From NCBI GenBank assembly GCA_964036045.1, contig OZ038378.1, positions 171,430,001 through 171,494,000 on the forward strand: a stretch of 64,000 bases of DNA. The letters run 5' to 3'. The notes below the pieces were generated by a model. The model was not told the DNA's origin, made no database searches, and saw only the letters and a program-made list of their open reading frames with translations. The stretch is from Eutreptiella sp. 'Long Island Sound 2002' (Eukaryota; Protista; Euglenida). Shown here piece by piece: positions 26,301-57,700 of this stretch; within the stretch, counting starts at the first letter, position 1, and every line of letters starts with the position of its first letter. Made by a program: the position numbers and the translations under genes.

Positions 26301-29300
26301 CAACATTCGATGCTTTGCTCTCTTGCAGAGGATGTTGAGGCATCAACTACACCAGCGCCGAAAGCAGGCTCTTCAAAAGGGGTATGGTTTTCTGTGTGTT
26401 CCCCCTGCCGCTACGCCCGGCCCCTGTCCCTCCCTGTCCGGGCCCGCATGTGCCTGTACCTTGTTTGTGCGGTGGGAGAGCTTGTTTGCAGCTCAGCCTC
26501 ATGCAATCTCTTACTCCTCTTTTGTGTGCTCCGTCGTCTGTCCATCCCTCCCTCCCTCCGTGCCTCCTCGCCATCCTTCCCTCCCTCCCTCCGTGCCTCC
26601 TCGCCATCCTTCCCTCCCTCCCTCTTCCCTCGCATTTTGACAGGATGAATCCTTATCCTGTACTCCCTACGCCAATTCAACCGAGGAGACCTGGAGCGCC
26701 TCGCGAAACCGTCCAAACGCGTAATTGGTCGCTGTGGTGTGCCTTCATCAAGATCGTGCTTGCTCGCTCGTTTTTATGGGATCAGCGTTGCTCTCTCTGT
26801 CGCTCGAGGCTGGCCTTTACCACGTTCACATGCTATCCCAGTCCAATCCCTTGCATGTGCTGGCACGGTTTGGGGCACAACAAGTTGGTTCCAAGCGCGT
26901 GCATACATCATTCATGGACGGGGTCGAAGCGAAGGGGAAAACGAGGGCAAGCAGAGTTGAATTTGCGGGGTTGTTGTGGGACGTCCTGTTGTACCTGCAC
27001 ACGAGGGTTCTCCCTGTGTTGTTGCTGTGCAGGATGTGGTGTGAGAAACACCCACTGCACGCTGCATGGGCGGTGAATCCCTGAAACCACCAGCAAAATG
27101 CCTGAGCAGTTTGCGCCCCACTGATGGGTAACACTTGGTGATGCGGAACCCCGAGCCCTTTCCCACATCAGTGGTGGTGAGCGGGAAAGGCTTTGCATGG
27201 AGCGTGCCGGCGCCGGCATGGGAGGGACGCCAGGGGGCAGAAGCAGCAGCTGTGAGTAGCGGGACAAGTGTCCCACTCTCACGCACCTAGAACAACCCCC
27301 CCCCCCCCCAGCTGTTAGGTAGCCCAACTGCCCACCTCTCACAGTTTTTTTGAACCCGCCCCAGAGTTCCACTTAACAACTCAGCACCAGTCGGGGGTGG
27401 GGGGGGGGGGTGATGGGGGGGTTTTCAGACCCCTTAAGTGATTGGGCCAAATTTTGCTCCGCACCTTTGGCCAATCAAAATTTTCTCTGGCGCCTTTGGC
27501 GCCAGTCAGTTTGGGTCAAAAAATTTTTCTTGGTCCTTTGCCCTCCATTACGCTGGGACCAGTAGGGAGGTGGGGGGGGGGGAGCACCCACCCACCCACC
27601 CACCCCGCTCTTAAGTGGAACTCTGACCCGCCCCCCTACCCCCTGCAACGAGTGGTGCAACCACCAACCCACCTGTTCACGAGTGGAGTTCACGATTCCC
27701 TCCTGAAAAGGCGCGAACATTCATACACCTGGAAGTACCAACCGGCCTACTCCTCTCACCCTTTTGGTGCATCCCCGCCGCCCAAGCCCCCCCCCCAACC
27801 CAACCCCTCAGTGCCACCAACAAGCATTTCACACAACAGATACGGCACTAGACCCCGTTTGTGCTACACTGTAACCTATCAGCTCTTATTACCGAGCTGG
27901 GTTTACCCTGTCGAGGTTTTACACCACCTTTTAGGGGCCAAGGCTGAGCTACACGTTTTAGCCAGCAGCAGCAGCAACAGCAGCAAGCAAGCAGAAGGTC
28001 CAAAAGTCCTTGCGACCACACCGTGGCTCAAAACCGGCATCCAAGTAGCTCAAAACGACCGGGGAGCGAATGCGCATCACCACAAACAAATTTCGTTGCG
28101 TTTTGAGCCGTCTAGCCCATTCTACGGCCGATTTACTGTCCAAAAATGGCCGTTTTTAGGCTATTTTCAGGACGATCGTCCTGAAAGTTCAGGACGATCG
28201 CCGGTGTGTTACGTGGGCGTTTGCAATGAGGGCCGTGGTTCTTCCATGGCGATTGGGCTATCAAATCATGGCAAATGGGTGTTCAATAAGGCGTGTACCA
28301 TGCCGTGGTGCCACACGGTGGTCCATTTCGAGGTGAAAACGAGCCGTTTTTGAGCGCGTTTTGAGCGCGTTTTAGGGTTTTAGGACCATCGTCATGACCG
28401 TGGAGGCACATCTCTAAAGCAAGCGGTCTTTCTTGTGACCACACCGTGGCTCAAAACCGGCATCCAAGTAGCTCAAAACGACCGGGCAGCGAATGCGCAT
28501 CACCACAAACAAATTTCGTTGCGTTTTGAGCCGTCTAGCCCATTCTACGGCCGATTTAGTGTCCAAAAACGGCCATTTTTGGGCTGTTTTCAGGACGATC
28601 GTCCTGAAAGTTCAGGACGATCGCCGGTGTGTTACGTGGGCGTTTGCAATGAGGGCCGTGGTTCTTCCATTGCAATTGGGCTATCAAATGATGGCAAATG
28701 GGTGTTCAATAAGGCATGTACCATGCCGTGGTGCCACACGGTGGTCCATTTTGAGGTGAAAACGAGCCGTTTTTGAGCGCGTTTTGAGCGCGTTTTAGGA
28801 CCATCGTCATGACCGTGGAGGCACATCTCTAAAGCAAGCGGTCTTTCTTCAACGGTGATTACCAATGCGTTACGCAAGATCGTTCCTCTTCCTGTAGTCC
28901 ATTTGGGGTGAACAATGGGCGGTGTCTTCCTGTAGTCCATTTGGGGTGAACAATGGGCGTTTTTGAGTTAGTGTTCAAGAGCGCACACGGCAGGGGCAAG
29001 AAGCTCGCAACACCTGGTGATCCATATGTGCCTTTGTTGCCATGTAGGCTTTCTCATGGCATCCAAGTGGCTGTTATGTACGTCCTTTGGTCGCAGCTCG
29101 CAACACCCGGCGATGCATATGTGCCTTTGTTGCCATGTAGGCTTTCTCATGGCATCCAAGTGGCTGTTATGTACGTACTTTGGTTGCAGCTCGCAACACC
29201 TGGCGATGCATATGTGCCTTTGTTGCCATGTAGGCTTTCTCATGGCATCCAAGCGGCTGTTATGTAGGTACTTTGGTCGCCGTGTAGGCTTTCTCACGGC

Positions 29301-32300
29301 AATCAAACGAATTGACCTTGTCCGGTGGAGAACAGCAGTGTTTGTTTGACCATGCTCATTCCTCAGAATTGTCCATTGGTTGAGTGCACTTGCTCCATAT
29401 GTGCCTTTGTTGTCATGTAGGCTTTCTCATGGCATCAAAACGTGCTTGTTATGTGGGTACCTTGGTCGCCGTGTAGGCCGTACGGTGGCAATCAAACTAG
29501 TTACCTTTCCCAACGAGGAACACCTATGATGTTTGACCATGCTCTGGTTAATTGCCAATTTGTGCCCCTTTGTGGACGCTTAGTTGCTTTTTTTTTCACC
29601 ATCCTTTTGGTGTGGATCTTATTGTATTTTCCATTTGGAGACATGCCTACGCCTTCACTGACCGACAAAGATTGTCATGATGTGGCTCACCTATGGGGAT
29701 GGAAGTGGGTACGCCAAGACAACCAAGACATGAAGGCCAAGGCGGTCATGCGTTGGACTTGTGCATCTTGTGGAGAATCCAAGGATGTACGGTTTGATAA
29801 TATGAAGAAGTTTGGCCCGGGAAAGCACAAGTGTTCAAAACAATCTCAACCACAACAGAAAAAGGCAAATGCGAAAGGAAAAGATGGTCGCCCATCCGTC
29901 ACCACGTTGCATTGCCATCAACTTGCGGCTGAATATGGATGTGATTGGTTGGGGGTGGTTGTGGACAATACCGTGCATGTAGATGACTCCCTCATTTCCT
30001 CAATTCGTGTGATGCGATGGCAATGTTGGGGTTGTACCACCATGTTTGATCGTACATCCAAAAAAATGAAGAGTCAAGGCTTTGTTTGCTCCACTTGTAA
30101 CGCATCACAATCTAAGGAGGACAAAAAGCGCGCAGGGCAAGCGGGTGGTGTGGTGGCATCCCGAGAGGACAAGCAGCGGGCAGGGCAAGCGGGTGGTGTG
30201 GTGGCATCCCGAGAGGACAAGCAGCGGGCAGGGCAAGCGGGCTCCAAGGAGAATAAGCAGCACGCAGGGCAAGCGGGCTCCAAGGAGAACAAGCAACGGG
30301 CGGGGCAAGCGGGCTCTCAGGAGGACAAGCAGCGGGCGGGGCAAGCGGGCTCCAAGGAGGACAAGCAGCGGGCAGGGCAAGCGGGCTCCAAGGAGGACAA
30401 GCAGCGGGCGGGACAGGCTAGCCCTAAGGAGGACAAGCAACGGGCGGGGCAAGTGGGGGGCCAAGCAGGCTCTAAGGAGGATAAGCAACGGGCAGGGCAA
30501 TGTGGGGCCGTTAGACGTGCTTTGAATTATGCACGTGAAACCGTGGCAAGTCAGTCAACACAAGCCATTCAGCACATGTGGGAGAGAGGCGATGAGATAG
30601 AACCGCCCGGATCCGTTGTGGATGAAGATGAGGAAGCCATGCTGCAATCGGTTGCAGGCCCATCACCTGATGAGTTTACGGGATCAAAGGTTGGCACATC
30701 CCTTGCTTCAACTGTGAGAGGCTTTTGGGAGCAAACCGGGATGGATAGATTTCCAATTCAACCTGCAGCCAATTTGGAGAGTTGTGAGTCTTTGGAGGCC
30801 TTGGTGCGAGCTATACTGGATGAGAAGGTGGACACCGTGGATATGGTGGCGTTGGCCAAAGAGTGGCACAAAAAAGTTGGAGTATGCGAGGACATTCAAT
30901 CTTGCGGGTGCTGCGGAGTGAGAGATTTCCAACAAGTGAAGGAAGTGGAGGTATCCAAGTTGGACCTTTTAAGGTTGGACCTAGAACAAGTTTCATGGTA
31001 CCATGGGATTCCCATTCAGTATCGCAAGTATGCCGCGGTCTTTGAACAAGACACAAGGCTATATTGGTTGCACCATGATCTTGTATCTAATGGTGCAGTG
31101 CAATTGTGTAATTCATGTCATCGGAGTTTGTTTCATCCAAAGAAAGGTCAAGTGCCACCAAATGCCATTGCTAGTGGCAAGCATTTTGGTAAGCGATGCG
31201 ACTTACCGGAGTTAACGGATTTGGAGGAGCGTATGTTGGGACGAGTGCGGACAACAGTAAACACCGTGAAGCTTGTTAGTGCCAAGAATGGTGCGACATT
31301 GCAATGGGGTGTTCGAGGACATGCCATTTCTGTGCCGCATGATGGACCCGAAGTGTTGGCTGCACGTCTACCGGATGTAGAGGCTCTGGTGGGTACGAAG
31401 GTCATTTTTGTGGGACCGCGCCGTGATGCGGAGGCTATGCGTCGTGATCAACATTGCAAAGAACGAGTAGAGCGAATCTTCACACCGCGATGGGATCGAT
31501 TGGTTCAATGGTTGCGAGTTTTGAAAGTGATCAATCCGGAATATGCCAACGTCGAAATCTTGGAGGTTGCACCACCTGAAGTGGTTGATTTTCCAAATGC
31601 CGTATTTGACAATATGTCCATTGGTGATCATCCAGACGTGATTGCAGCCGAAAAGCAATCCGGTGCGGACATTGCAGGAGCAAGAAAAGGTGACTTGGAT
31701 GATGGTGAGGTAATATTGGATGCTGTTATGCTGTCGGATGGAGCATTATTGAATTGAGATGGGAACGATGTGCCACAGGTTCTTCAATCTATCAAGGAGA
31801 TGCTAGCGGACCGTCGTAACAGTATAGTTCGACGAGAAGAAGTTGGCATGAACGAGTTTGAGGCCAATGACCGCCTTTTGACGTTGTCCTTTCCCTCGTT
31901 GTTTATGTTTGGAAGTGGTATCAAGCGGCCATGTGGAGTTTCGGAAGCGGATACAAGGCACATGTTGTTGCAATATGATAATCGCTTTGCTGAAGCCCGC
32001 GACTTTTGTTTGTTGCTCTTTAATCAAAAGTTCCGCCACACAGCGTTGCGAAGCGTCAGGGACGCCATTTATGCCAATCCCAATCGAATGAAGGCATTTG
32101 AGACGGCCATCAATACGCCCAATCTTGAGGAAGATTTGAAGAAGGCAGAAGCAAACCCCCAAGGAAAAGAAGCGCGACACCTTGTGCACACATTCATGCC
32201 TTTGTTGCGGACTTACCATGCAGCAGTGCCCTTCAGCACTTCGGAGCGGTATGCAGTGATGGGGAAGATGAATAGTATGATACTGTTCTTTGGGCCTCCA

Positions 32301-35300
32301 AGTCTCTTCTACACGGTTGCACCAAATGATATAGACAACGAGTTGTCTTTATGTTTGTCGATGGGTGATCGGCAAGCCCGTGCTCCATTGCCACAGGTTT
32401 CGCGGCGATTTGAAGCATTATCCAAGAACCCTGTGGCCGCCGCACGCATTTTTGAGCGACAAGTGAGGGCTTTCTTGGAGGTTTTGCTAGGTCTTCCCAG
32501 TTCCAAGCAAACCAAGAAAGATCGTGCGGTGTGCAACCGGAAGAAGGGTCTATTTGGTACATGCGTGGCCCATTGCACATGCTACGAGTGCCAAGGCCGA
32601 GGCTCTCTCTATTTCCATGGTCTCTTTTGGGGTGGCATTCCCCCATGGTTGTTGGACATGGTTGTGGGGAATAGCGAGCTTGTGCAAGCCGTTGCCGCGG
32701 TGTTGGATCAACAAATATGTGCCGCATTGGATGCCCACATTCACCAGGATTATGAGCATAGACTAAAGCACAAGGTTGAAGCCCCACGTATGCTAGAGGA
32801 GAAACAACTTTTGCCTCCATTGCCGGACGACCCCCATGAAGCGGCACGGGAAATTGAACAGTTTGCCTCCAAGGTCTTTGGCAACATTCAAATCCACAGG
32901 TGTCTCATTGCTAGTTGCGGCAAACCACCAGGAGGAAAAAGCGGGTGCCGTTTTGGGTTGCCTCGTGCAGCGGGAGAAGGGTATGATGACACAAGGCCAC
33001 ATTTCTTTGTGGCGTATCATACCCCTTCAGGAAGGCACAACATCCGGATGTATGAGTCGGAGGTAGAATTTGATGCCAATGATGAAAAGGTAAGCTGTGT
33101 TCTCGTCATATGGGAGTTGCGCCGGCCACATCCTTGTGATGGACGTGTGGTTGAAACCAACAAACTCTTGGCCTACCTGTATGCTAGCAACACCAATGTG
33201 CAATTTCTCGGAGGTGAGGACGTGCTGGTTGCTGTGGCCAAATACGTTGTTGGTTACTGTAGCAAGAATCCGGTAAGGATTGCCCATGTGTTGAGCACAA
33301 TTCGTCAAGTGACTCGTGAGGTGGACAAAATGGACACCACGCAGTTTGCACAACCCGGAGAGAAGGAGGCTCTCTTGCTAAAGCGCATCATCAACTCGTT
33401 GGACAAGAAGGTGGAATTTAGTGCGCAAATGGCAGCCGTCTCCTTGTTGGGATATCCCTCATGGCATTGCTCTCACAAGTTTGCCGTTGTGCATCCTTGG
33501 AGCACTGTAACCGCCATTCTCGCTTTATTCAATGGAATGTTGGAAGATGGAGACGGGGAGAATACAAGTGATGATGAAGGTCATGCAAACTTGCAGAATA
33601 TTTGTGTAGATGCGCCATCCATATCGTCATGCGTGTCAGATGTGGTGGATGACGATCCCTTGGCAACATCACATGTTGATATGCAGGAAGCATCACAAAC
33701 AGCAACACATCCGCCTCCAAATGACAATGGCACGGGTTCTTCAGAGGATGACCAAGATGACAACAATACTCTTGTGGAACACCTGAACTCTTTGACAATG
33801 GATGTGGCACAACCTGATGCGGATGCAACATGCCGAGCATACCTTTACACAGTGGGTGAAGGATTGGAAGCCAGGAAAATTGCTGTCACGCCCGCCATCA
33901 ATTATGCTTGTTGTGGGAAGCGGCTTAGGGCCCTTTGCGCTCTTGAGTATTATTGTCTCATCAAAATAGAGCAACGGCGTGCAACGGACCCTATTGAAGT
34001 TACCGATGGAGTCAATGATGGACGCCCCAAAAATGCCATGGTTGATTTCCATCCCCGGCATGTGCTTGATGATAGCAATTACGTGCAATACCTAGTGTCA
34101 CAATCTAGGTGCCCTATCTTGGCAGGGAAGCGCATGCCCGTGTGGCCCGGTGTGGATGGTAGTGCTCGCACAAGGAAGGCATGGGCCCAGTTTGTCATGT
34201 GCAATTTCGTTCCTTGGGATATTGAACAACCGCCCCAAATCACTTGGAACGATTACTTGCAATGGGAGGAACATTGCAAGACCGCACATGCAAGCTACTT
34301 GGAGCGCAGTCGGCATTCCATGGTTGTCCGGTTGAAGAAGATTGGGCACTATGATCGCTTGCGAAAGTCATTGACGGATGACATTCGAAAGCGTTGTAGG
34401 AAGATTTGGGGTGTGAGGCACCCGTTGGATGTTGATTTCAATGCGGGTAAGGAGATGGCGGAGCTGAAGGAAACGAGAACGGAGGTGAAAGATACCAGGT
34501 TCGCCGAAGCGGTGCAAGATATGCAAGAAGCAATTCAAAGAGCCCAAAACGCAAATAAAAGAGGACGTGCGGCTTCAAGTGAGGAGTTTGATATCCTCAA
34601 AGAAGCCTTGAATTTGCACTTGGGCTTGGCACCGGCGATGAGTCATGCCTCACAGGAGAAAGAAACAAAGTTTCTTTATGCTTTGGGCGATGATCATCAT
34701 TACCCACATGGAGATGATATTTACTCCCATGCCCAAAGAGTATTCGATGGTATCAAGGGTGAGGAGGAGTCACCGGAGACAGATGTTTCTTCCACATGTG
34801 ATGGTCACATTAGATCAACAGGAAGTCCGGATCAAGAAGAGATCATCGACAGGATCACAAATTACGTGAGGTTAGAGGCCACGTGCGACTCATCCGCAAA
34901 GCCAATTGCACCTTTGGTCTTCCTACATGCTGGCGGAGGAACGGGAAAGAGTTGGGTGGCACGGGAAATCCATGCAAGATTACGACAAAGCTTTGGTTGG
35001 AACGTTGTGCGATTTGTTGCTCCATCAGGAATCGCCGCAAGTAATCTGGCAAAGGGATCTACCATCCATCATGCATTGGGCCTTGCTGTTTTTGATGGAG
35101 ACAGTGAAACACTGCAATGCGAGAGTGACAAGGCAAAGTTGCACCGCTTGCGCAAACTTTTTGAAGGTTGCAAAGTGTTGATAGTGGATGAAGTCTCAAT
35201 GGTTGGTTGTCGCATGCTACGGGATATTCATAGCCGCCTATGTGAGATCATGCAATGCCAAGATAAACCATTTGGCGGTATGTGCGTGGTATTGATGGGT

Positions 35301-38300
35301 GATTTTGTGCAATTAACGCCTGTTGGTCAAACGGAATTGTTTGGATCTGTAAAAGTCCAAGTTGGTGGGCAAGACTTGAATGATGTATTTGGCCGGGAAT
35401 TGTTCCAAAAGTTTGATGAGGTGAGTCTCGTGAAACAACATAGAGCCACGGATCCACAATATGCTGCATCGGTATCCGCCTTCCGTGAATGGACCACTAG
35501 TGCTCTGCAAACACGCATGGAATTCTTGGATACCATTGTGGAAATCACCCCAGAGGAATTCAAGGACCCTACCTGGCAAGAAACCACAATCGTTAGCACT
35601 CATCAAAAGACCGTTCACGCTGTGAATGAAGTCATGCTTCAACGATTTGCCATTGCTCGAGGATTGCCCATTGTAGCTTGGAGGTTGCCAATGGTTGACA
35701 AGTATGAAAAGAAGTTTGGACACAATTCAAATTTCATATATGACACGGTGAAAGACATGACCGCATACTTTGTCCCACAAGCACCTTGTTGCCTCACAAG
35801 CAATTTCAGACCAGAGAAAGGATTGTCCAACGGCACCCAAGGACGGTTGCATAGCATTGTCCTACATGCCGATGAAGCGCAAGGTAGAGTGCAAGAGATC
35901 CGTGATGCAGGTGCTGGTACTTTAGTGATGCTTGAGTTCCCACCATTTTGTGTCACCATTGCCATTGATGCTTCGGCCTTAAGTACAGGTGGAATGCAAC
36001 ATGAGGATGCATCAAAGGTCGTTGTTCCTCTCATGCAAGTGCAACGCAAGATCAACATTCATCGGTACATTGCTGTACGCACCAAAGGCGGTGGGTCTTT
36101 GTACACTCACGCACATCCCTTCCGATTAACCTTTGGATCAACATATCATGGGGTGCAATGTAGGTCAATGGATAAAATCATCTTGGTCGTGGATGACAAG
36201 AGCCTACCTGCGTTGACGTACAACGCCTTCTACGTGGGCATTAGCCGGGTTCGCACGGGTGCTGGTCTTCGTGTTATTCGCTTGCGGAACCACGAAGAGC
36301 CACCGGAAGATTGGCGGGGTCGATTGAAGTCACTTGTTCCCAAAGTCATGGTTGTTCGATATATGTTGAAAACGAGCTATGAGAATGCTCACAACTTGTT
36401 GAAGGCCATGTATCGTGAATGGGATATTGACTACGACATGAGAGGCCACGACAAGAGAATGCATCGCAAGGGATCCAAGAAGTTCCCTAAAAAAGGAATA
36501 TTTCCTTGCGGCAAGCAATGTGGTCGGGTGTTCGCCACTCCACATCATCGGCGACTGCATGAAGCAAGTTGCAAGCATAACCCCAGCAATGCCGGCCAAG
36601 AGGAGAATGTGCAACATGCTTCCATCGTCAAGCCCCACTCGAGTGGCAAACGACCAATCAATACACCGTCACCAGGAGCCCGCAAAAGGCAATGTACGGA
36701 TACACATACACACACCCATGAAAGACAAGAAATGGAAGGGGATATCATTGACACGGTGCTGCAACCCGCATTGGATGAAGACACTTTCAACAGCGCCGCT
36801 TCCGAAGCACGAACGTTGCTAGATGAACAAGGACAACAAAGACTAGAACGGAAAGGAAAGCAACGTGTACGTGACAATGAAATCTCACCTACCGCACCGT
36901 CAAAGCGGAGACACCGTTCATCCACATCAACACCGGCAACAACATGCCATGCAACTTCACCTCCTAAAGCCTCCTCACTATCGCCACAAACCTCCGCACC
37001 CCCTGCATGTGCAACGCCCATCCAATCATCGTCATCATCTTCTTCTTCCTCCCAATCAATGCATGGTCCGACTACACCTTGGGTTCCATGCCACATTTCC
37101 GCCGTGCCGGGATCCACATTGGTTGAAATTGGATCACTATTGTCGAAGCCCAAGGACCAGGTCACCATGGCTCAAACTCTACTGGGTGCCACGAGTGCTC
37201 AAGATGTTCGCAAACATTACTTGAAGCTCAGTGTTCAACTGCATCCTAATAAGTCTAAAGACTCTTGGGCCACGGATCGCTTTCAATTGCTTTTGAAGGC
37301 ATATAATCTCTTGAAGGACAAGTATAAGTTGCATTGAAAAGCTTCATATGTGCTTCGCCTCAACCGACGGGACTCAAGTAATAGCTATGGCTTGAGCTTC
37401 GCAGCCGGTGGCGCCGGCAGCAATATAGTCATTTGCCGTTGCTTGCCAAACGTCGAAGGGTGTTTCACATTTTGGACTTTGTGGGGTCAAGAAACATGGA
37501 TATCGGCTTTTTACAAGTTGCACTCTTTTGAAGAAGGGATGTTCAGAGTGGGCAAGTGGGCTTTCCCTTGCTGCTGAACAAAGCATTGGCTGGAACCAAA
37601 AAGCATGGATCGGGCGTTTGGACAAGGTGGACTTTGTTGGGGCATGTTCAGAGTGGGCAAGTGGGCTTTCCCTTGCTGCTGAACAAAGCATTGGCCGGTC
37701 TCAAGAAGCATGGATTGGACGATTCTACAAGGTGGACTTTGTAAAAGAGGGGCATGTTCAGAGTGGGCAAGTGGGCTTTCCCTTGCTGCTAAACAAAGCA
37801 TTGAAGTGGGGTCAAGAAACATGGATATCGGCTTTTTACAAGTTGCACTCTTTTGAAGAAGGGATGTTCAGAGTGGGCAAGTGGGCTTTCCCTGCTGCTG
37901 AACAAAGCATTGAGTGGAGTCAAAAAGCATGGATTGGGCGTTTGTACAAGGTGGACTTTGTTGGGGCATGTTCAGAGTGGGCAAGTGGGCTTTCCCTTGC
38001 CGTTGAACGAAGCATTGGCCGCAGTCAAGAAGCATGGATTGGAAAATTGTACAAGGTGGACTTTATAGGAGAGGGGCATGTTCAGAGTGGGCAAGTGGGC
38101 TTTCCCTTGCTGCTGAACAAAGAATTGCAGTGGGGTCAAGAAACATGGATATGGGCGTTTTACAAGTGGCACTCTTTCGAAGAAGGGATGTTCAGAGTGG
38201 GCAAGTGGGCTTTCCCTTGCTGCTGAACAAAGCATTGGCCGGAGTCAAGAAGCATGGATCGGATGTTTGTACAAGGTGGACTTTGTAAAAGAGGGGCATG

Positions 38301-41300
38301 TTCAGAGTGGGCAAGTGGGCTTTCCCTTGCTGCTGAACAAAGCATTGAAGTGGGGTCAAGAAACATGAATATGGGCGTTTTACAAGTGGCACTCTTTTGA
38401 AGAAGGGATGTTCAGAGTAGGCAAGTGGGCTTTCCCTTGCTGCTGAACAAAGCATTGGCTGGAGTCAAAAAGCATGGATTGGGCGTTTGTACAACGTGGA
38501 CCTTGTTGGGGCATGTTCAGAGTGGGCAAGTGGGCTTTCCCTTGCTGTTGAACAAAGCATTGGCCGCAGTCAAGAAGCATGGATTGGACGATTCCACAAG
38601 GTGAACTTTGTGGAAGAGGGGCATGTTCAGAGTGGGCAAGTGGGCTTTCCCTTGCTACTGAACAAAGAATTGCAGTGGGGTCAAGAAACATGGATATCGG
38701 CTTTTTAGAAGTTGCACTCTTTTGAAGAAGGGATGTTCAGAGTGGGCAAGTGGGCTTTCTCTTGCTGCTGAACAAAGCATTGGTTGCGGTCAAGAAGCAT
38801 TGGTTGGGCGGTTGTACAAGGTGGACTTTGTTGGGGCATGTTCAGAGTGGGCAAGTGGGCTTTCCCTTGCTGCTGAACAAAGCATTGGCCGGAGTCAAGA
38901 AGCATGGATTGGACGATTCTACAAGGTGGACTTTGTGGAGAAGGGGCATGTTCAGAGTGGGCAAGTGGGCTTTCCCTTGCTGCTGAATAAAGCATTGGCC
39001 GGAGTCAAGAAGCATGGATTGGACACTTCTACAAGGTGGACTTTGTGGAAGAGGGGCATGTTCAGAGTAGGCAAGTGGGCTTTCCCTTGCTGCCGAACAA
39101 AACTCGCAAGTGGGTCGAGAAGTTTGGAAGTGCTACTATCCATGTTGTATGTGGTTTGGCGCAGCCATCATACTTCATGGGGCACATTTTGGAAGAACCT
39201 CATGAACATGCGGATGTCTCAACATATCTGGGTTCACAAAGACTTGTGGTTTTATGCCAACGGCACGGAGGCTGGGGGGCAACGGGTGCTATGCTCTTGG
39301 CCGATGGGAAGCGCCCCCTCCGGTATACAAACAACCTATCGGAGCAGCGTAGCACCTAAGACCGGGGGATTTACTCTAGTTGGGGGAGTAGAGTTGGGTC
39401 ATTATGACCTTATGGGCTGTATCCCGACATTGCAATCATTTTTCAATTTTCCGAGACATTTGGTCCGATTGTTTCTTTTATTCCAAAGTACGTAGGGCAC
39501 AAAAGTCTTCAAGGCACAAACTCCCATGTGTTACGCAACACTAGGACCCAGCTCGGTCCTAGTTCGAGTCTTGATTGGACGTACCCACCCCAACCCTGCT
39601 GTGCCTAAGATGCAGTGCGCAGGGGTAGTCGATGGCTTCAGTACAGGTGCAAGTGATACCAGGAGGACAGCAGGGGCAGGGGCAGCATCGAATAGTGATG
39701 GGTTTCGTGCAGACCAGGAGGAAGCTGTACAGGAGGGGTCATGAAGAGCCTCTCGTCAGCCGCGAGGCGCAGAACGGTGTCTTGCTGGGCATGTTGGACA
39801 TTTTATGGGGTGCGTTGCTAACATTTGTGCTTAGAGCTTGAGCTGGGTGACGCCCATCGTCCTATTAATGGCCAAGATGAGGAGGGGTACCGACTGTATT
39901 ATTGGTGACCTGGTTTAAGGCTGTCAACATTTTCAAGTCCGATTTCTTTTGTGTATTTCTTCTCCATCTGACTGGTGCAGAACAGCGTTGTTCAACAGTG
40001 TTTCCAGCATTCACCCCTTTACGCTCAGCCACGTCACCGTCAAGTTCGACTGCGGGGTGCCTTTGGATTGCCGGGCCGTCGCGCTGAAGTTCGTGAACAC
40101 TGAACACGACTCTCAGGTGTGCATTTGGTGCCCCTCTGAGGGCTGCTGCCCGGGTCTCTGCTAATCTGCTAATCTGCTGAACACGAGAGCCACAGTGAGA
40201 GCGGTGTTGAGAAGTTGATGAGCCTTGGTGGAGAAAGTCTCCCTTAGGCCAAGCCCCCTCTCTCCCTGTCCCAAACCCCTTCCCTCCATCCCCATCCCTG
40301 CCCCCTCCTCCTTCTCACTGGAGCCCAGATGTGTGATGTATGGCCCATGCAACATGCCTGTCCCGAGGCCTCGTCACGAAAAAGTGGCGTATCACTCCAG
40401 CTCTTGGCAGCCCGCTAGGTGCCTCACTTACCTGGGTCCTTGGCTGTAGGAGCTGGGGACCTTAACCACTCTGCTCCTGGTCTAGGCAGGGCAACACTCC
40501 TTAACTGGCACCGGGAGCAAAGCTGAAGGTCCCAAACACTGGCTGAATGCCTGCCCAAAGGTCGTGGGTTTGTCACCAAGGTTTGACATTGATGGCCGCT
40601 TCAGGCAACTGCAGGTTTACCGCTGGTGTGCTGGGTAGCGTGGCGCAGGAACCCCATGCTGTCCATTGCCCTGAAGCAATTGCCTCACCTTGATGGTTCC
40701 CACTGCTGCAAGGAAATGCAACTGCAGGATAGTCAAGTGCTTCCAACTGAATCGAGGGGAATCAGCACATGGTGCAGGATAGTCAAGTGCCTCCAACTGA
40801 ATCGAGGGGAATCAGCACATGGTGGAGGGCCCAGTGCCCCTCGTTGAGATCTGGCAGTTCTGGCCCTTGGGGGTCAGTTGTCTTGCATGTAACCAGGGTT
40901 TTCATTTGCAGGGCACCCATTGAGAAGTTTCCCAGAAGACTATCGGCAGAATGAGGAATACTGATAAAATATGGGCGAAACTAGGAAGCTTCCCAAATTC
41001 TGGAAAAATCATGAGAAACAACAATGAAACATTGGCAAAAGGCAGTTTCGGTGTGTGATGGGTGTGATGAGGGTGGGTATAGTGAGTTGTGATCTTGAGA
41101 AATGGGGGGGAATGGGATGATGGCAACATGGAGCATGTGGGTCTCTTTCCATAATGCTATCTTTTTTGGCCCATGTTTGTGACCGTGTACTGTGCATAAT
41201 TACAATGGGTTGCGTTACACAGGTTGGGTATTGGCTGGCTGCCCTCCAAGCAGATGACTCATCTCAACACTGATTCGCATAGCTACCTATTTCTTAAAGG

Positions 41301-54700: not shown

Positions 54701-57700
54701 TAATACGGGAACCGGTTTTTTTTTTGCAATGATTCCCCTCTTTACTTTGAGCGAAATCTAGGTGCATCTGTATCCCATCCATCTGCACAGAGGTACAGGC
54801 TCATGGATCCGAAATGCCTCTGTCATGTCTTCGCCAACGGCAACATCACCATAACCGGTGTTAAGGTATGGCTCCGGCTGCAAGGGTCATGTGCGGTTGC
54901 ATGGATTTGGGGTTTTTTCGACCGCACATGCGCATGTGTAGTAACCAGAGGCACCTTTTGCCGGGGCAATGCAGGAATTTATGTCGCTAGATGTTTGTAC
55001 AATCAATGCGGCTGAGAAGCAGCATGGATTTCAGCCTTCCTTGCCAGCTGCTGTCCTTGGATCCGGATCCCTGGATGGGGTGCGGGTCAGAAAGGCAACT
55101 CAATTTCGATCCAACAGCAAAAAGAGGAGCATGCAGAACATGCGAAGAGGCAGTAAGGCATATTACTTTTGGGGACCGGGTTGCAGGTGCTAGCCACATG
55201 TTGGTGAGTCTGTTTTAGTTAGATGTTTGATGTCATAGCAGCGAGCGCTCGAGGACATCTTTTTTTTTTCATGATCTGACTCATTGCTTGTGCCTGTGTG
55301 CGTGCGCACGTGCACGTTTGCACGTGAAGAAGTTGGCCACACATCGTACGATGGGCACAGCTATTTAGCACATATCGGCAAGAATTAAAGGATGCGTTTT
55401 GTCTCCCTAAGAAATCAAAGCAAACCATGACTTCACAGCTTTCACACCCACCAGCCCACATGCCTCTTATGCCCACGCTTCCAGGCTAGACGCTGCAAGA
55501 CGTGATTGTGCACCCTCCTGTGGTCACAACACCCCCAAGACCACCAAACACCACTTCAACCAAGGCACAGTTGGCATTGGCAGGGGTAGAGGCAAGTGGT
55601 TATACCCTAGGGCTGGTTTTTGTGAAGTCAGACTTTCACTTGGGGCACAGGGGGTCAATAGAGCCCCCCCAAACACTGGGGGGGGGGAATCTGGGAAAAG
55701 GGCTCAATTGACGGGGAGCATTATTTCCATTGGAGGTGAAGACCCAAGAAGGAAAGTTTTGTCAAGTGGCCTGCTGCAAAAATATCCATGATGGACGCAT
55801 TGCCACCACATGCTCCTAGAACGATACAATGTATGGTTCTCCCCAGGGTATGTGCATCAAGCAGTAAGTATGCAGTTACCCTTGTTACCTAGGTAGCTTG
55901 AGAGTTACCAAGCTGGGTCTTGCAGTGGAGGTTTTACAACCCATTTTGCGGTTGAGCAATGTAGTTTAGTAGCAGCAAGCAGCAGCAAGCAGCAAGCAGC
56001 AGTAGCAGCAGCACGTAACAGGCGGTTCAAAACTCTTTGTGGGGGTGCCGTGGCTCAAAAATGGCGTCCAAGTTGCTCAAAATGACCGCGGAGGAAATGC
56101 GCATCACCTAAAATAAGTTGTGTGTGGGTTCGAGGCATCAAGCCTGTTTTATGGACGATTTAATGTCCAAAAACGGCCATTTCCAGCGTATTTTCAGGAT
56201 GATTGCCGTGGTCCCATGTGGTGGTCTGTTTTGAGGTGAAAATGAGCAGTTTGTTTTCCGACGATCGTCCTGAAAGTCCAGAACGACCACCAGTGTGTCC
56301 TGTGAGCGTCTCCAATGAGGGCTGTTCTTCTTCCATGGCAATTGGGCCATTGGGCTATCAAATGATCAGTCAAAGTCGCAACTCTTGATAACACTCTTTA
56401 GGGTGCGGGGTGGAGAGTATGAAGTGCAATAAAACAAATGCACACCAAGCTTCCAAAGCACTTCAAAGAGGTTGTTAGATCAAGTGCAGGCGGGTATTTT
56501 AGGGTGGTATTCACATAGCATCCCCTGAGGGGTTAAATGTCAGACATTTTACATGTAACATCATCATTTTATGAGACAAAAATATCCCCTGAAAAGTTTT
56601 TGAAATTTGGGCCTGCCAAATCCCTGAACGGACCACCGACTTTTTTGGGAGGGCAGTCAAAAAATTTTTTCTTGACCCTCCCCCGGTTTTGCTCAGGACC
56701 GCAGATTTCTTGGATTCCTTTGATTCGAGGCCCAAAAAGTTTTGGACCTCGTTGTATAGGGACTGGGGACTTTGAGCAGTTTTTAGGCTGTTCAGTGGTA
56801 TTTGAAATTTTTTGAATTTGACTTTTTCCAAGACCCTTTTGTGGGCTCTCGGATGCGTTTGGGTCATCATTTGGTGACATGGGTACTCTAGCACCCATGG
56901 GGACCCACATAGTGACTGCTCACTCAATGCAGGCAGGACCATGGGCCCCGAAGCCCCTGCTGTTTCAGCCTGTTCAGTGGCAATTTTCCAAAAAAAAAAA
57001 GGCCACTGCAACCAGAAATTGTTTTCAACAATTTTTTTTTGAACACAAGAATTTTTTGAACAAATTTTTTTCCAACAACAACTTTTCCAACAAAATTTTT
57101 TTCATACAAAAAATTGTTTTTCTACACCAAACATGTTTTCGCAACAAAAGTTTGTCCCCAACAAAAATGTTTTGGAAGAACAAGTTAATTTTCAGCAACT
57201 AATTTCTGCCAATGGAATTTTTTCCACCAAACCATTGTTTCATCAAAAAAATTTTCTGACAAAAACTTGGTGTTTCCAGCGAAGAATTTTTCTGCAAAAC
57301 AAAATTTTTTCTCAACAACAAATCTTTTCCATCAAAAAATTTTGGAGTAAAACTTTTTTGGACAAATCTTTTTCTAACCAAAACTTGCTGTTAAAATTTT
57401 GTTGCATCCAAAATTGTTGCAATAGAAAATTTTTCCAACAAGGAGATTTTCCAACGAAATTTTCTCAACCAAAATTTTTTTCGTAAAAACACTTTTTTCC
57501 AATAAATTTTTGCCCAAATAAAGAAGTTTTTCTAACTGCTGTTTTAGGCTGTTCAGCGGCATTCTTGAAAATCTTTCTGTGTGCTGGGAAATGGAAATGG
57601 GTCGCTGGGTGCTTTGTTTGCTAGGAATTGCACAGGTGGCAACACCACGATTTATGTGTGCGGTATGTTTGCCAAAAAAAATCAGGTTTCCCTCAGGCAT

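What the first reader, a model, noticed from the sequence alone, without database searches (positions are those of the whole stretch)
36500..37337. Helitron RepHel ending in a zinc finger, a Ser/Thr-rich linker and a DnaJ-type J-domain
After helicase motif VI come C-x3-C-x12-H-x3-C (FPCGKQCGRVFATPHHRRLHEASC, 36501-36572), a low-complexity linker, and TLLGATSAQDVRKHYLKLSVQLHPNKSKDSWATDRFQLLLKAYNLLKD, which matches J-domain helices II-III. Accessory domains I know from Helitron/Helentron proteins are OTU protease, RPA-like, AP endonuclease and zinc fingers, and I am not aware of a J-domain fusion. The architecture parallels polyomavirus large T antigen (J-domain plus replicative helicase recruiting Hsp70), suggesting chaperone-assisted rolling-circle transposition (inference). 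No AP endonuclease is present.
Basis: partly seen in the sequence, partly recalled or inferred. Interest (0 to 1): 0.85.

Follow-up and report, generated by a model that had tools for sequence, protein, structure and literature searches.

The report
Helitron transposase ending in J-domain
A rolling-circle jumping gene (Helitron-like element) of a marine euglenid alga makes a giant transposase whose last 60 residues are a genuine Hsp70-recruiting J-domain. Several diverged relatives keep this add-on and I found no report of it, but the copy in this window is dead.

Summary
The 1,855-aa ORF 31770-37337 is a RepHel (Helitron_like_N and PIF1). It continues into a C2HC zinc finger (36501-36572), a partly conserved linker and a C-terminal J-domain (37161-37334). 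The J-domain passes Pfam's DnaJ cut-off, matches 20 solved J-domains by sequence and folds confidently (pLDDT 92).

The fusion is not private to this copy. It is present in a family of at least 89 ORFs in the same genome, and in older RepHel lineages there that are 38-80% identical. In an aquatic-metagenome element a related J-domain (50% identical) sits as a separate ORF right behind a RepHel-deubiquitinase ORF. The family consensus is HPD. J-domain dN/dS between sub-families is 0.22-0.33.

The window copy has three lesions: a premature TGA (31755), HUH changed to YFH (32610) and HPD changed to HPN (37248). The HPN change is the same D-to-N change that abolishes Hsc70 binding in a polyomavirus T antigen.

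The element carries DUF6570, the published marker of Helentron-type (HLE2) elements, and has inverted-motif hairpin ends at 27892 and 39547. The nearest outgroups lack the J-domain.

Best reading: a built-in co-chaperone that brings host Hsp70 to the transposase. This is inferred, not shown. I found no published Helitron J-domain. This scan had already noted the same fusion elsewhere in this genome (s1-199730, s1-228037).

The parts
27880..27901 (+). Left end: hairpin 27880-27899 that overlaps the 10-bp motif CCGAGCTGGG (27892-27901), the inverse of the motif at the right end
   Evidence: The motif occurs once in the window. DNA fold z = -2.15. Homology to copy L004 starts at 27884.
27884..28879 (+). 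Left-end repeat units of about 550 bp: 2 units here, about 8 in L004
   Evidence: blastn of L004 against the window
29442..31757 (+). N-terminal part of the transposase (771 aa): Cys-rich motifs, 12-aa coding repeats and DUF6570 (31143-31562). It is in the same frame as the RepHel ORF.
   Evidence: Pfam DUF6570 at 60.7 bits. Same frame as the next ORF. In copy L004 one gene call carries both DUF6570 and Helitron_like_N.
31755..31757 (+). Premature stop TGA where another copy (P0012) has Arg; this is lesion 1 of this copy
   Evidence: P0012 reads ...LLNRDGNDVPQV...
31770..37337 (+). RepHel ORF of 1,855 aa: Rep, PIF1 helicase, zinc finger, linker, J-domain
31956..32624 (+). Rep (Helitron_like_N) domain. 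The HUH motif reads YFH here (TAT at 32610-32612), which is lesion 2. The Y-x3-Y motif lies at 33240-33266.
   Evidence: Pfam 80 bits. P0004, P0007 and P0012 read SLHFHG where the window reads SLYFHG.
34884..36257 (+). PIF1-like SF1 helicase, with Walker A at 34932-34952 and Walker B at 35178-35201
   Evidence: Pfam PIF1 at 93.4 bits, plus AAA_30, AAA_19 and Viral_helicase1; motif coordinates
36501..36572 (+). C2HC zinc finger, C-x3-C-x12-H-x3-C
   Evidence: The pattern is kept in L001 (33% identical tail) and twice in outgroup P0056. The whole-tail model shows a beta-beta-alpha element there at pLDDT about 65. There is no Pfam hit.
36774..36869 (+). Conserved helical motif (D-x-D-F-N-x-A-A...LLD...KGKQRV) inside the 'linker'
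   Evidence: Aligned between the window family and L001, L006 and L009. Helical in the model at pLDDT 63-75.
36885..37079 (+). Ser/Thr/Pro-rich linker predicted to be disordered, including a poly-Ser run
   Evidence: It has indels and low conservation between sub-families.
37080..37160 (+). Extra N-terminal helix that packs on the J-domain in the model
   Evidence: AF2 helix at residues 11-20 with pLDDT above 90. Conserved in P0016, P0017 and P0019.
37161..37334 (+). J-domain, helices I-III with no helix IV. The loop reads HPN at 37242-37250, and the AAT at 37248-37250 is lesion 3. The stop codon is at 37335-37337.
   Evidence: At 37248 the window has A, while all contigs of runs X1 and X4 read G, which gives HPD.
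37481..39101 (+). 110-bp satellite (about 15 copies, with a 325-bp higher-order unit) inside the element's 3' region
   Evidence: TRF. The same array follows the ORF in L004.
39540..39563 (+). Right end: 9-bp-stem hairpin containing CCCAGCTCGG (39547-39556), the reverse complement of the left motif
   Evidence: z = -2.30. Homology to L004 ends at about 39517.

Best explanation
Window 27.9-39.6 kb is one copy of an 11.7-kb Helentron-type (HLE2) rolling-circle transposon of a marine euglenid.

The family's transposase is a single protein of about 2,640 aa. Its parts, in order, are DUF6570, the HUH/Y2 Rep nuclease, a PIF1 helicase, a C2HC zinc finger, a conserved helical motif, a disordered Ser/Thr-rich tether and a C-terminal J-domain.

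The J-domain is an old, selectively maintained part of this RepHel lineage. It is not a chance read-through.

Proposed mechanism (inferred): helix II and the HPD loop dock on host Hsp70 and trigger its ATPase. Hsp70 is thereby loaded onto a client held next to it, namely the RepHel itself or its complex with DNA. I split the possible roles as follows:
- about 45%: remodelling, that is assembly, activation or release of the initiator-helicase on the transposon ends. Hsp70/J systems do this for the lambda P-DnaB complex, for P1 RepA and for polyomavirus large T antigen.
- about 35%: folding and stabilising the giant protein. This is the same 'proteostasis' slot that relatives fill with OTU or UCH deubiquitinases.
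- about 10%: acting on a host target.
- about 10%: no Hsp70 role.

The copy in this window is inactive. It has a premature stop, YFH instead of HUH, and HPN instead of HPD.
For: The domain is real:
- Pfam DnaJ scores above the gathering cut-off.
- It matches 20 solved J-domains by sequence.
- The AF2 model has pLDDT 92.4, and nearly all of its top PDB fold matches are J-domains.

It is family-wide:
- The 90% cluster has 89 members on many contigs of assembly ERZ25074135.
- P0004, P0010, P0013, P0014 and P0016 end in the same tail with HPD.
- Every contig of two runs reads G at 37248.

It is old and conserved:
- Collinear RepHel remnants at 70-80% (L009), 44-53% (L006) and 38-67% (L001) identity all end in the J-domain. 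L001 and L006 have HPD; L009 has decayed to HLD.
- L003 has a Cys-repeat array followed by a J-domain.
- The metagenome element L002/L011 has PIF1, UCH and then a J ORF. Its helicase is 31% identical to the window's but its J-domain is 50% identical.
- J-domain dN/dS is 0.22 (L004 against L009) and 0.33 (against L006), compared with 0.38-0.40 in the rest of the tail, even though those copies are decayed.
- The nine Helitron tails group together in a tree at 80/88 support, apart from one interloper.
- No close host donor turned up. The best non-Helitron J-domains among 1.8 billion representatives are 41-44% identical.

Module logic:
- Outgroup P0055 has an OTU-like tail in the same slot, and P0056/L010 has none.
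- HELIANO lists UCH, OTU, Peptidase_C48 and HSP20 among stable extra domains of Helitron-like elements, places UCH and HSP20 almost exclusively in HLE2, and names DUF6570 as the HLE2 marker (PMC11417382).

The D-to-N change in HPD abolishes Hsc70 binding and the replication function of Merkel cell polyomavirus large T (PMC8567380).
Against: - No binding, ATPase or transposition data exist, so the Hsp70 link rests on homology alone.
- Helix IV is missing, and Pfam covers only profile positions 12-57.
- All fused examples come from one genome. The one foreign family has the J-domain as a separate ORF.
- Two JGI metagenome scans found no further relatives.
- The dN/dS estimates rest on 58 codons and on pseudogenised copies, and the contrast with the rest of the tail is modest.
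- The tree has 57 columns and only moderate support, and a stand-alone J protein (P0031) nests inside the Helitron group.
- RNA evidence is only low-depth metatranscriptome contigs that could be DNA carry-over.
Confidence: 0.7

Rival explanations
1. Passenger capture. A host DnaJ exon was captured once at the 3' end of the transposase gene, as Helitrons often do with host gene fragments. It happened to stay in frame and was copied along with the family without serving transposition.
For: Helitron-like elements are known gene capturers (PMC11417382). The window family is young (copies are 90-96% identical), so many copies alone do not show selection. The closest outgroups lack the J-domain.
Against: The J-domain persists at the same C-terminal position in lineages whose RepHel is only 38-67% identical. 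The intervening Ser/Thr linker decays while the J-domain does not. HPD is kept in most lineages. dN/dS is 0.22-0.33. No near-identical host donor was found.
Confidence: 0.1
2. Degenerate J-like domain with another role. The fold is kept as a protein-protein or oligomerisation module that does not signal to Hsp70.
For: Helix IV is absent, an extra N-terminal helix is present, and the Pfam match is partial. The best sequence match in the PDB (2cug) is titled a 'pseudo DnaJ protein'. Some copies carry HPN, PPD or HLD.
Against: HPD is the consensus and is retained in diverged lineages. Helix II keeps the basic residues typical of Hsp70-binding J-domains (alignment). The variants HPN, PPD and HLD occur in copies that show other decay.
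Confidence: 0.1
3. Host manipulation rather than self-chaperoning. The J-domain directs Hsp70 at a host factor, for example a silencing or cell-cycle complex. Polyomavirus T antigen does this with Rb-E2F complexes, and plant J-protein SILENZIO acts at methylated transposons.
For: Analogy only. SILENZIO links a J-protein to transposon silencing (PMC8616336). T-antigen J-domain functions are listed in PMC8567380. Deubiquitinases in sister elements could also act on host targets.
Against: No host-binding motif was identified in the tail, and nothing in the sequence data points to a particular target.
Confidence: 0.1

Closest known systems
Helentron / HLE2 Helitron-like elements with accessory domains (OTU, UCH, Ulp1/C48, HSP20, EN, RPA)
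   Same: It has the DUF6570 marker, an HUH/Y2 Rep, a PIF1 helicase, short inverted terminal motifs with hairpins, and extra protein-handling domains attached to or beside RepHel (PMC11417382).
   Different: The accessory domain is a J-domain fused in frame at the extreme C-terminus. DnaJ does not occur in the main text of the 404-genome HELIANO survey; its Table S11 could not be read. No EN domain is present.
Polyomavirus large T antigen (J-domain, origin-binding domain, replicative helicase)
   Same: One polypeptide combines an HPD J-domain with an origin-recognising module and a replicative helicase. In T antigen the D-to-N change in HPD abolishes Hsc70 binding and replication support (PMC8567380).
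   Different: In T antigen the J-domain is N-terminal, the helicase is SF3/AAA+ and the origin-binding domain is not an active nuclease. Here the J-domain is C-terminal on a long disordered tether, the helicase is SF1 PIF1-like and the Rep is a cutting HUH enzyme. No homology beyond the J-fold is implied.
Cellular class III (type C) J-domain proteins
   Same: A J-domain with HPD and a basic helix II is attached to an unrelated client-specifying body. The predicted fold matches DnaJ, Hsp40 and DNAJC J-domains.
   Different: It lacks helix IV and has an extra N-terminal helix. It resides in a transposase. The best non-Helitron relatives are only 41-44% identical.
Chaperone-dependent replication initiators of phages and plasmids (lambda P/DnaB, P1 RepA, F RepE, with host DnaK/DnaJ/GrpE)
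   Same: An initiator or helicase complex needs Hsp70/J-protein remodelling to become active (established knowledge, not tested here).
   Different: There the J-protein is supplied by the host in trans. Here it would be built into the initiator-helicase.

Membership tests
J-domain (Pfam PF00226 DnaJ) | Profile match above the curated gathering score | tested here: met
   33.9-39.4 bits against a cut-off of 27.8; 20 solved J-domains matched by phmmer.
J-domain (Pfam PF00226 DnaJ) | Helix II - loop - helix III hairpin fold with helix I | tested here: met
   The AF2 model has pLDDT 92.4, with helices at residues 27-35, 40-54 and 64-82. It superposes on J-domains at 1.8-2.0 A over 56 columns. Helix IV is absent because the ORF ends.
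J-domain (Pfam PF00226 DnaJ) | Invariant HPD tripeptide in the loop | tested here: not met
   The window copy reads HPN (CAT CCT AAT, 37242-37250). The family consensus and diverged lineages read HPD. The family therefore qualifies, but this copy is a mutant.
J-domain (Pfam PF00226 DnaJ) | Stimulates Hsp70 ATPase | not testable with these tools
   Needs biochemistry.
Helitron-like element, HLE2/Helentron type | Rep domain with an HUH motif and two catalytic tyrosines, upstream of the helicase | tested here: inconclusive
   Helitron_like_N scores 80 bits and the Y-x3-Y motif is present. HUH reads YFH in this copy but HFH in P0004, P0007 and P0012.
Helitron-like element, HLE2/Helentron type | PIF1-family SF1 helicase in the same protein | tested here: met
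   PIF1 at 93.4 bits; Walker A and Walker B are intact.
Helitron-like element, HLE2/Helentron type | DUF6570, the published marker separating HLE2 from HLE1 | tested here: met
   60.7 bits in the N-terminal ORF. Marker status comes from PMC11417382.
Helitron-like element, HLE2/Helentron type | Short terminal inverted repeats with a stem-loop, and insertion at T-T | tested here: inconclusive
   A 10-bp inverted motif lies at 27892 and 39547, inside hairpins, and copy homology ends nearby. The exact termini and the target site were not resolved.
Polyomavirus large T antigen family | N-terminal J-domain, origin-binding domain and SF3 helicase | tested here: not met
   The J-domain is C-terminal and the helicase is PIF1/SF1. 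The resemblance is one of function only.

The most novel reading that the evidence does not exclude
A lineage of eukaryotic rolling-circle transposons has built an Hsp70 co-chaperone into its transposase, so that transposition depends on the host Hsp70 cycle. On this reading, J-domains, deubiquitinases (OTU, UCH) and HSP20 are interchangeable 'proteostasis' modules that giant RepHel proteins acquire repeatedly. I know of no other transposon-encoded J-domain. It would be convergent with polyomavirus large T antigen.
Probability: 0.55. Interest if true: 0.75.

Novelty: new variant of a known kind. Interest (0 to 1): 0.6.

Why it matters
How Helitron RepHel proteins are assembled on their ends, switched on and released is poorly understood, and no host cofactor is firmly established.

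A conserved built-in J-domain names a specific and easily tested host partner, Hsp70. It links eukaryotic rolling-circle transposition to the chaperone-dependent activation long known for phage, plasmid and polyomavirus replication initiators.

It also suggests a common rationale, control of transposase folding and turnover, for the puzzling deubiquitinase and small-heat-shock domains of Helentrons.

For annotation, it warns that DnaJ hits at the ends of giant ORFs in euglenid genomes may belong to transposons, not host chaperones.

Tried and rejected
- Word-indexed protein searches restricted to the tail found only the element's own 90% cluster. More distant fusions with long ORFs were not recoverable this way.
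- Scans of JGI metagenome contigs with the L002 protein and with a trimmed tail alignment found nothing.
- An IMG/VR scan gave only ordinary viral DnaJ genes with no RepHel beside them.
- The exhaustive representative search gave 39 hits. Apart from the Helitron tails these were multi-J-domain or ordinary J proteins.
- P0031, which groups with the tails, sits on a dense contig of unknown genes with an F-box protein and no RepHel. It is neither a clear donor nor a Helitron.
- dS is saturated against L002.
- The whole-tail AF2 model is poor (pLDDT 44).
- RNA evidence is inconclusive. All four runs laid were held as assembled contigs, and only two low-depth metatranscriptome runs were RNA.
- The prokaryote-type promoter/terminator scan is irrelevant here.
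- HELIANO's supplementary domain table is not held in the library, so 'DnaJ absent from their 20 domains' rests on the main text only.
- I considered a programmed frameshift joining UCH to the J ORF in L002. I rejected it because the stop codon precedes the A-run.
Full report
**What is in the window**

The ORF listing and translation show a 1,855-aa ORF at 31770-37337 on the + strand. A 771-aa ORF (29442-31757) precedes it in the same frame. The two are separated only by AAT TGA GAT. Another copy, P0012, reads Arg at that codon, so the stop is a point lesion of this copy. The family protein is therefore about 2,640 aa long.

Pfam finds these domains:

| Domain | Position | Score (cut-off) |
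|---|---|---|
| DUF6570 | N-terminal ORF | 60.7 bits |
| Helitron_like_N | aa 63-285 | 80 bits |
| PIF1 (with AAA_30, AAA_19) | aa 1039-1187 | 93.4 bits |
| DnaJ | aa 1809-1852 | 33.9 bits on the whole ORF; 39.4 bits on the last 85 aa (27.8) |

No endonuclease/exonuclease/phosphatase domain is found. The finger FPCGKQC...HEASC lies exactly at 36501-36572.

**Is the J-domain real?**

- phmmer against PDB sequences returns 20 distinct J-domains, including DNAJB1, DNAJB2, DNAJB8, Ydj1 and E. coli DnaJ.
- I aligned the tail with the 38 other hits of an exhaustive search of 1.8 billion representatives. With that alignment, AlphaFold2 gives pLDDT 92.4 and pTM 0.84.
- The model has an extra helix (residues 11-20), helix I (27-35), helix II (40-54), the HPN loop and helix III (64-82). 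There is no helix IV because the protein ends there.
- Nearly all of the model's top Foldseek matches in the PDB are J-domains, at 1.8-2.0 A over 56 columns and probability 1.00. The E-values are weak because the domain is small.

**Is the fusion private to this copy?**

It is not.

- The tail-restricted search finds a 90% cluster of 89 ORFs. They lie on many contigs of the same ENA assembly, ERZ25074135.
- Members P0004 (1,895 aa), P0010, P0013 and P0014 end in the same tail with HPD. P0001 has PPD. P0005 is the window's own product.
- I laid contigs of four public runs on 31500-37400. Every contig of runs X1 and X4 that covers 37248 reads G where the window has A. HPD is therefore the family state and Asn is private to this copy.
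- The window also reads SLYFHG where P0004, P0007 and P0012 read SLHFHG, so the HUH motif is hit (TAT at 32610-32612).
- The copy therefore carries three inactivating-looking transitions: the stop, HUH to YFH, and HPD to HPN. The D-to-N change is the same one that abolishes Hsc70 binding and replication support in Merkel cell polyomavirus large T (PMC8567380).

**Older lineages**

Short ORFs among the representative hits led to further loci.

| Locus | RepHel identity to window | J-domain | Other features |
|---|---|---|---|
| L009 | 70-80%, collinear remnants | 78% identical, decayed to HLD | same genome |
| L006 | 44-53% | HPD | same genome |
| L001 | 38-67% | 51% identical, HPD | same C2HC finger; same D-F-N-x-A-A...KGKQRV motif; unalignable stretch before the J-domain |
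| L003 | not detected | HPD | array of Cys repeats before the J-domain |

Outside this genome, contig L002 comes from an aquatic metagenome, and L011 from a second assembly is 99% identical to it. These contigs encode a PIF1 helicase and a UCH deubiquitinase, followed by a J ORF with HPD. The helicase is only 31% identical to the window's, while the J-domain is 50% identical. In that family the upstream ORF stops (CTG TGA) and the J ORF starts 6 nt later in another frame. It is therefore an adjacent gene and not a fusion.

**Constraint on the J-domain**

NG86 estimates over the 58 J-domain codons and over the rest of the tail:

| Region and pair | dN/dS | Note |
|---|---|---|
| J-domain, L004 vs L009 | 0.22 | dS 0.58 |
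| J-domain, L004 vs L006 | 0.33 | dS 1.04 |
| Rest of tail, L004 vs L009 | 0.38-0.40 | |

Both partners (L009 and L006) are decayed, which biases the ratios upward. The sample is small, so I treat this as supporting evidence and not as proof.

A maximum-likelihood tree of 39 J-domains has only 57 columns and so low resolution. It puts the nine Helitron tails together with one stand-alone J protein (P0031) at 80/88 support. No close host donor exists among the representatives. The best non-Helitron matches are 41-44% identical.

**Outgroups**

A helicase-region search finds the nearest other RepHels at 41-48% identity.

- P0056/L010 has DUF6570, Rep, PIF1 and two C2HC fingers. It has no J-domain in the 1.3 kb that follow.
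- P0055 has a finger followed by an OTU-like tail, scoring 20.4 bits, below the 23.3 cut-off.
- P0057 is cut after the finger.

The position behind the finger is thus a slot that different lineages fill with different protein-handling modules.

The HELIANO survey (PMC11417382) reports 20 stable extra domains in Helitron-like elements. These include OTU, UCH, Peptidase_C48 and HSP20. It names DUF6570 as the HLE2 marker. DnaJ does not occur in its main text, and its supplementary table was not available.

Full-text searches for Helitron with J-domain or DnaJ, and for transposase with DnaJ domain and rolling-circle, returned only incidental co-mentions.

**The element**

- blastn against copy L004 shows homology from 27884 to about 39517.
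- The left end carries repeat units of about 550 bp (27884-28879).
- A 110-bp satellite (37481-39101) follows the ORF in both copies.
- CCGAGCTGGG (27892) and its reverse complement CCCAGCTCGG (39547) each occur once in the window. Both sit in hairpins, with z = -2.15 and -2.30. This fits the short inverted ends with a stem-loop described for HLE2.
- I did not resolve the exact termini or the target site.

**Mechanism**

Shown:
- the domain order
- the J-fold
- the HPD consensus
- conservation across lineages

Inferred:
- The J-domain sits on a disordered tether of about 65 residues. It would dock on host Hsp70 and load it onto the RepHel or its DNA complex.
- I favour remodelling of the initiator-helicase complex, by analogy with lambda P/DnaB, P1 RepA and large T antigen. 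Folding or stabilisation of the giant protein is a close second, given the OTU and UCH modules in the same slot.

**Expression**

Expression is not established. Only low-depth metatranscriptome contigs touch the ORF, one of them at 37077-37239.

**Earlier notes of this scan**

The scan had already flagged RepHel plus J-domain on other DNA of this genome (s1-199730, s1-228037). It had also flagged the inverted terminal motif on this window (s1-213185). My results agree with these notes and add four things: the private lesions of this copy, the graded series of older lineages, the metagenome family with a separate J ORF, and the outgroups that lack the J-domain.

**Verdict**

This is a real and apparently unpublished accessory domain in a known kind of transposon. 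It is conserved enough to argue for function. This particular copy is a dead one.

Noticed in passing
L002:4640-4950 and L011:1810-2125: In an aquatic-metagenome Helitron (PIF1 plus UCH), the J-domain is a separate ORF. It starts 6 nt after the upstream stop (CTG TGA AAAAAA ATG), in another frame. The junction is identical in two independent assemblies. How the ORF is expressed is unknown; reinitiation, trans-splicing or an unrecognised intron are possibilities.
   Followed up: partly
L007:5627-6583 (P0031): A stand-alone 318-aa J-protein groups with the Helitron tails in the tree. It sits on a densely packed 7-kb contig of unknown genes plus an F-box protein, from a different sample. It could be a relative of the donor or a viral homologue.
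   Followed up: partly
P0055:861-1118: A RepHel that is 48% identical in the helicase carries, behind a C2H2 finger, an OTU-like cysteine protease tail (sub-threshold, 20.4 bits). This is the position where the window family has its J-domain.
   Followed up: partly
window 30117-30457: In-frame 36- and 48-bp tandem repeats encode K-E-D-K-Q-R-A-G-Q-A-G-S units in the N-terminal part of the transposase. Repeat number differs between copies (80% identity with gaps against L004).
   Followed up: no
window 37481-39101: A 110-bp satellite (about 15 units, with a 325-bp higher-order period) lies inside the element between the stop codon and the right end. It is also present in copy L004. It contains long spurious ORFs on both strands.
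   Followed up: partly
window 27884-28879; L004:82-5300: The left-end units of about 550 bp are duplicated 2 times here and about 8 times in L004. L004 also holds two elements in series and an internal inverted duplication of the Rep region (L004 8357-10225).
   Followed up: no
window 55905-56205: A fragment 70-78% similar to the element's left-end repeat unit lies 16 kb downstream of the element, probably a remnant of another copy.
   Followed up: no
L003:8300-9900: Upstream of its J-domain, this locus has a long array of roughly 25-30-aa units, each with paired Cys motifs (C-x-K-V-T-C-P-S-C type).
   Followed up: no
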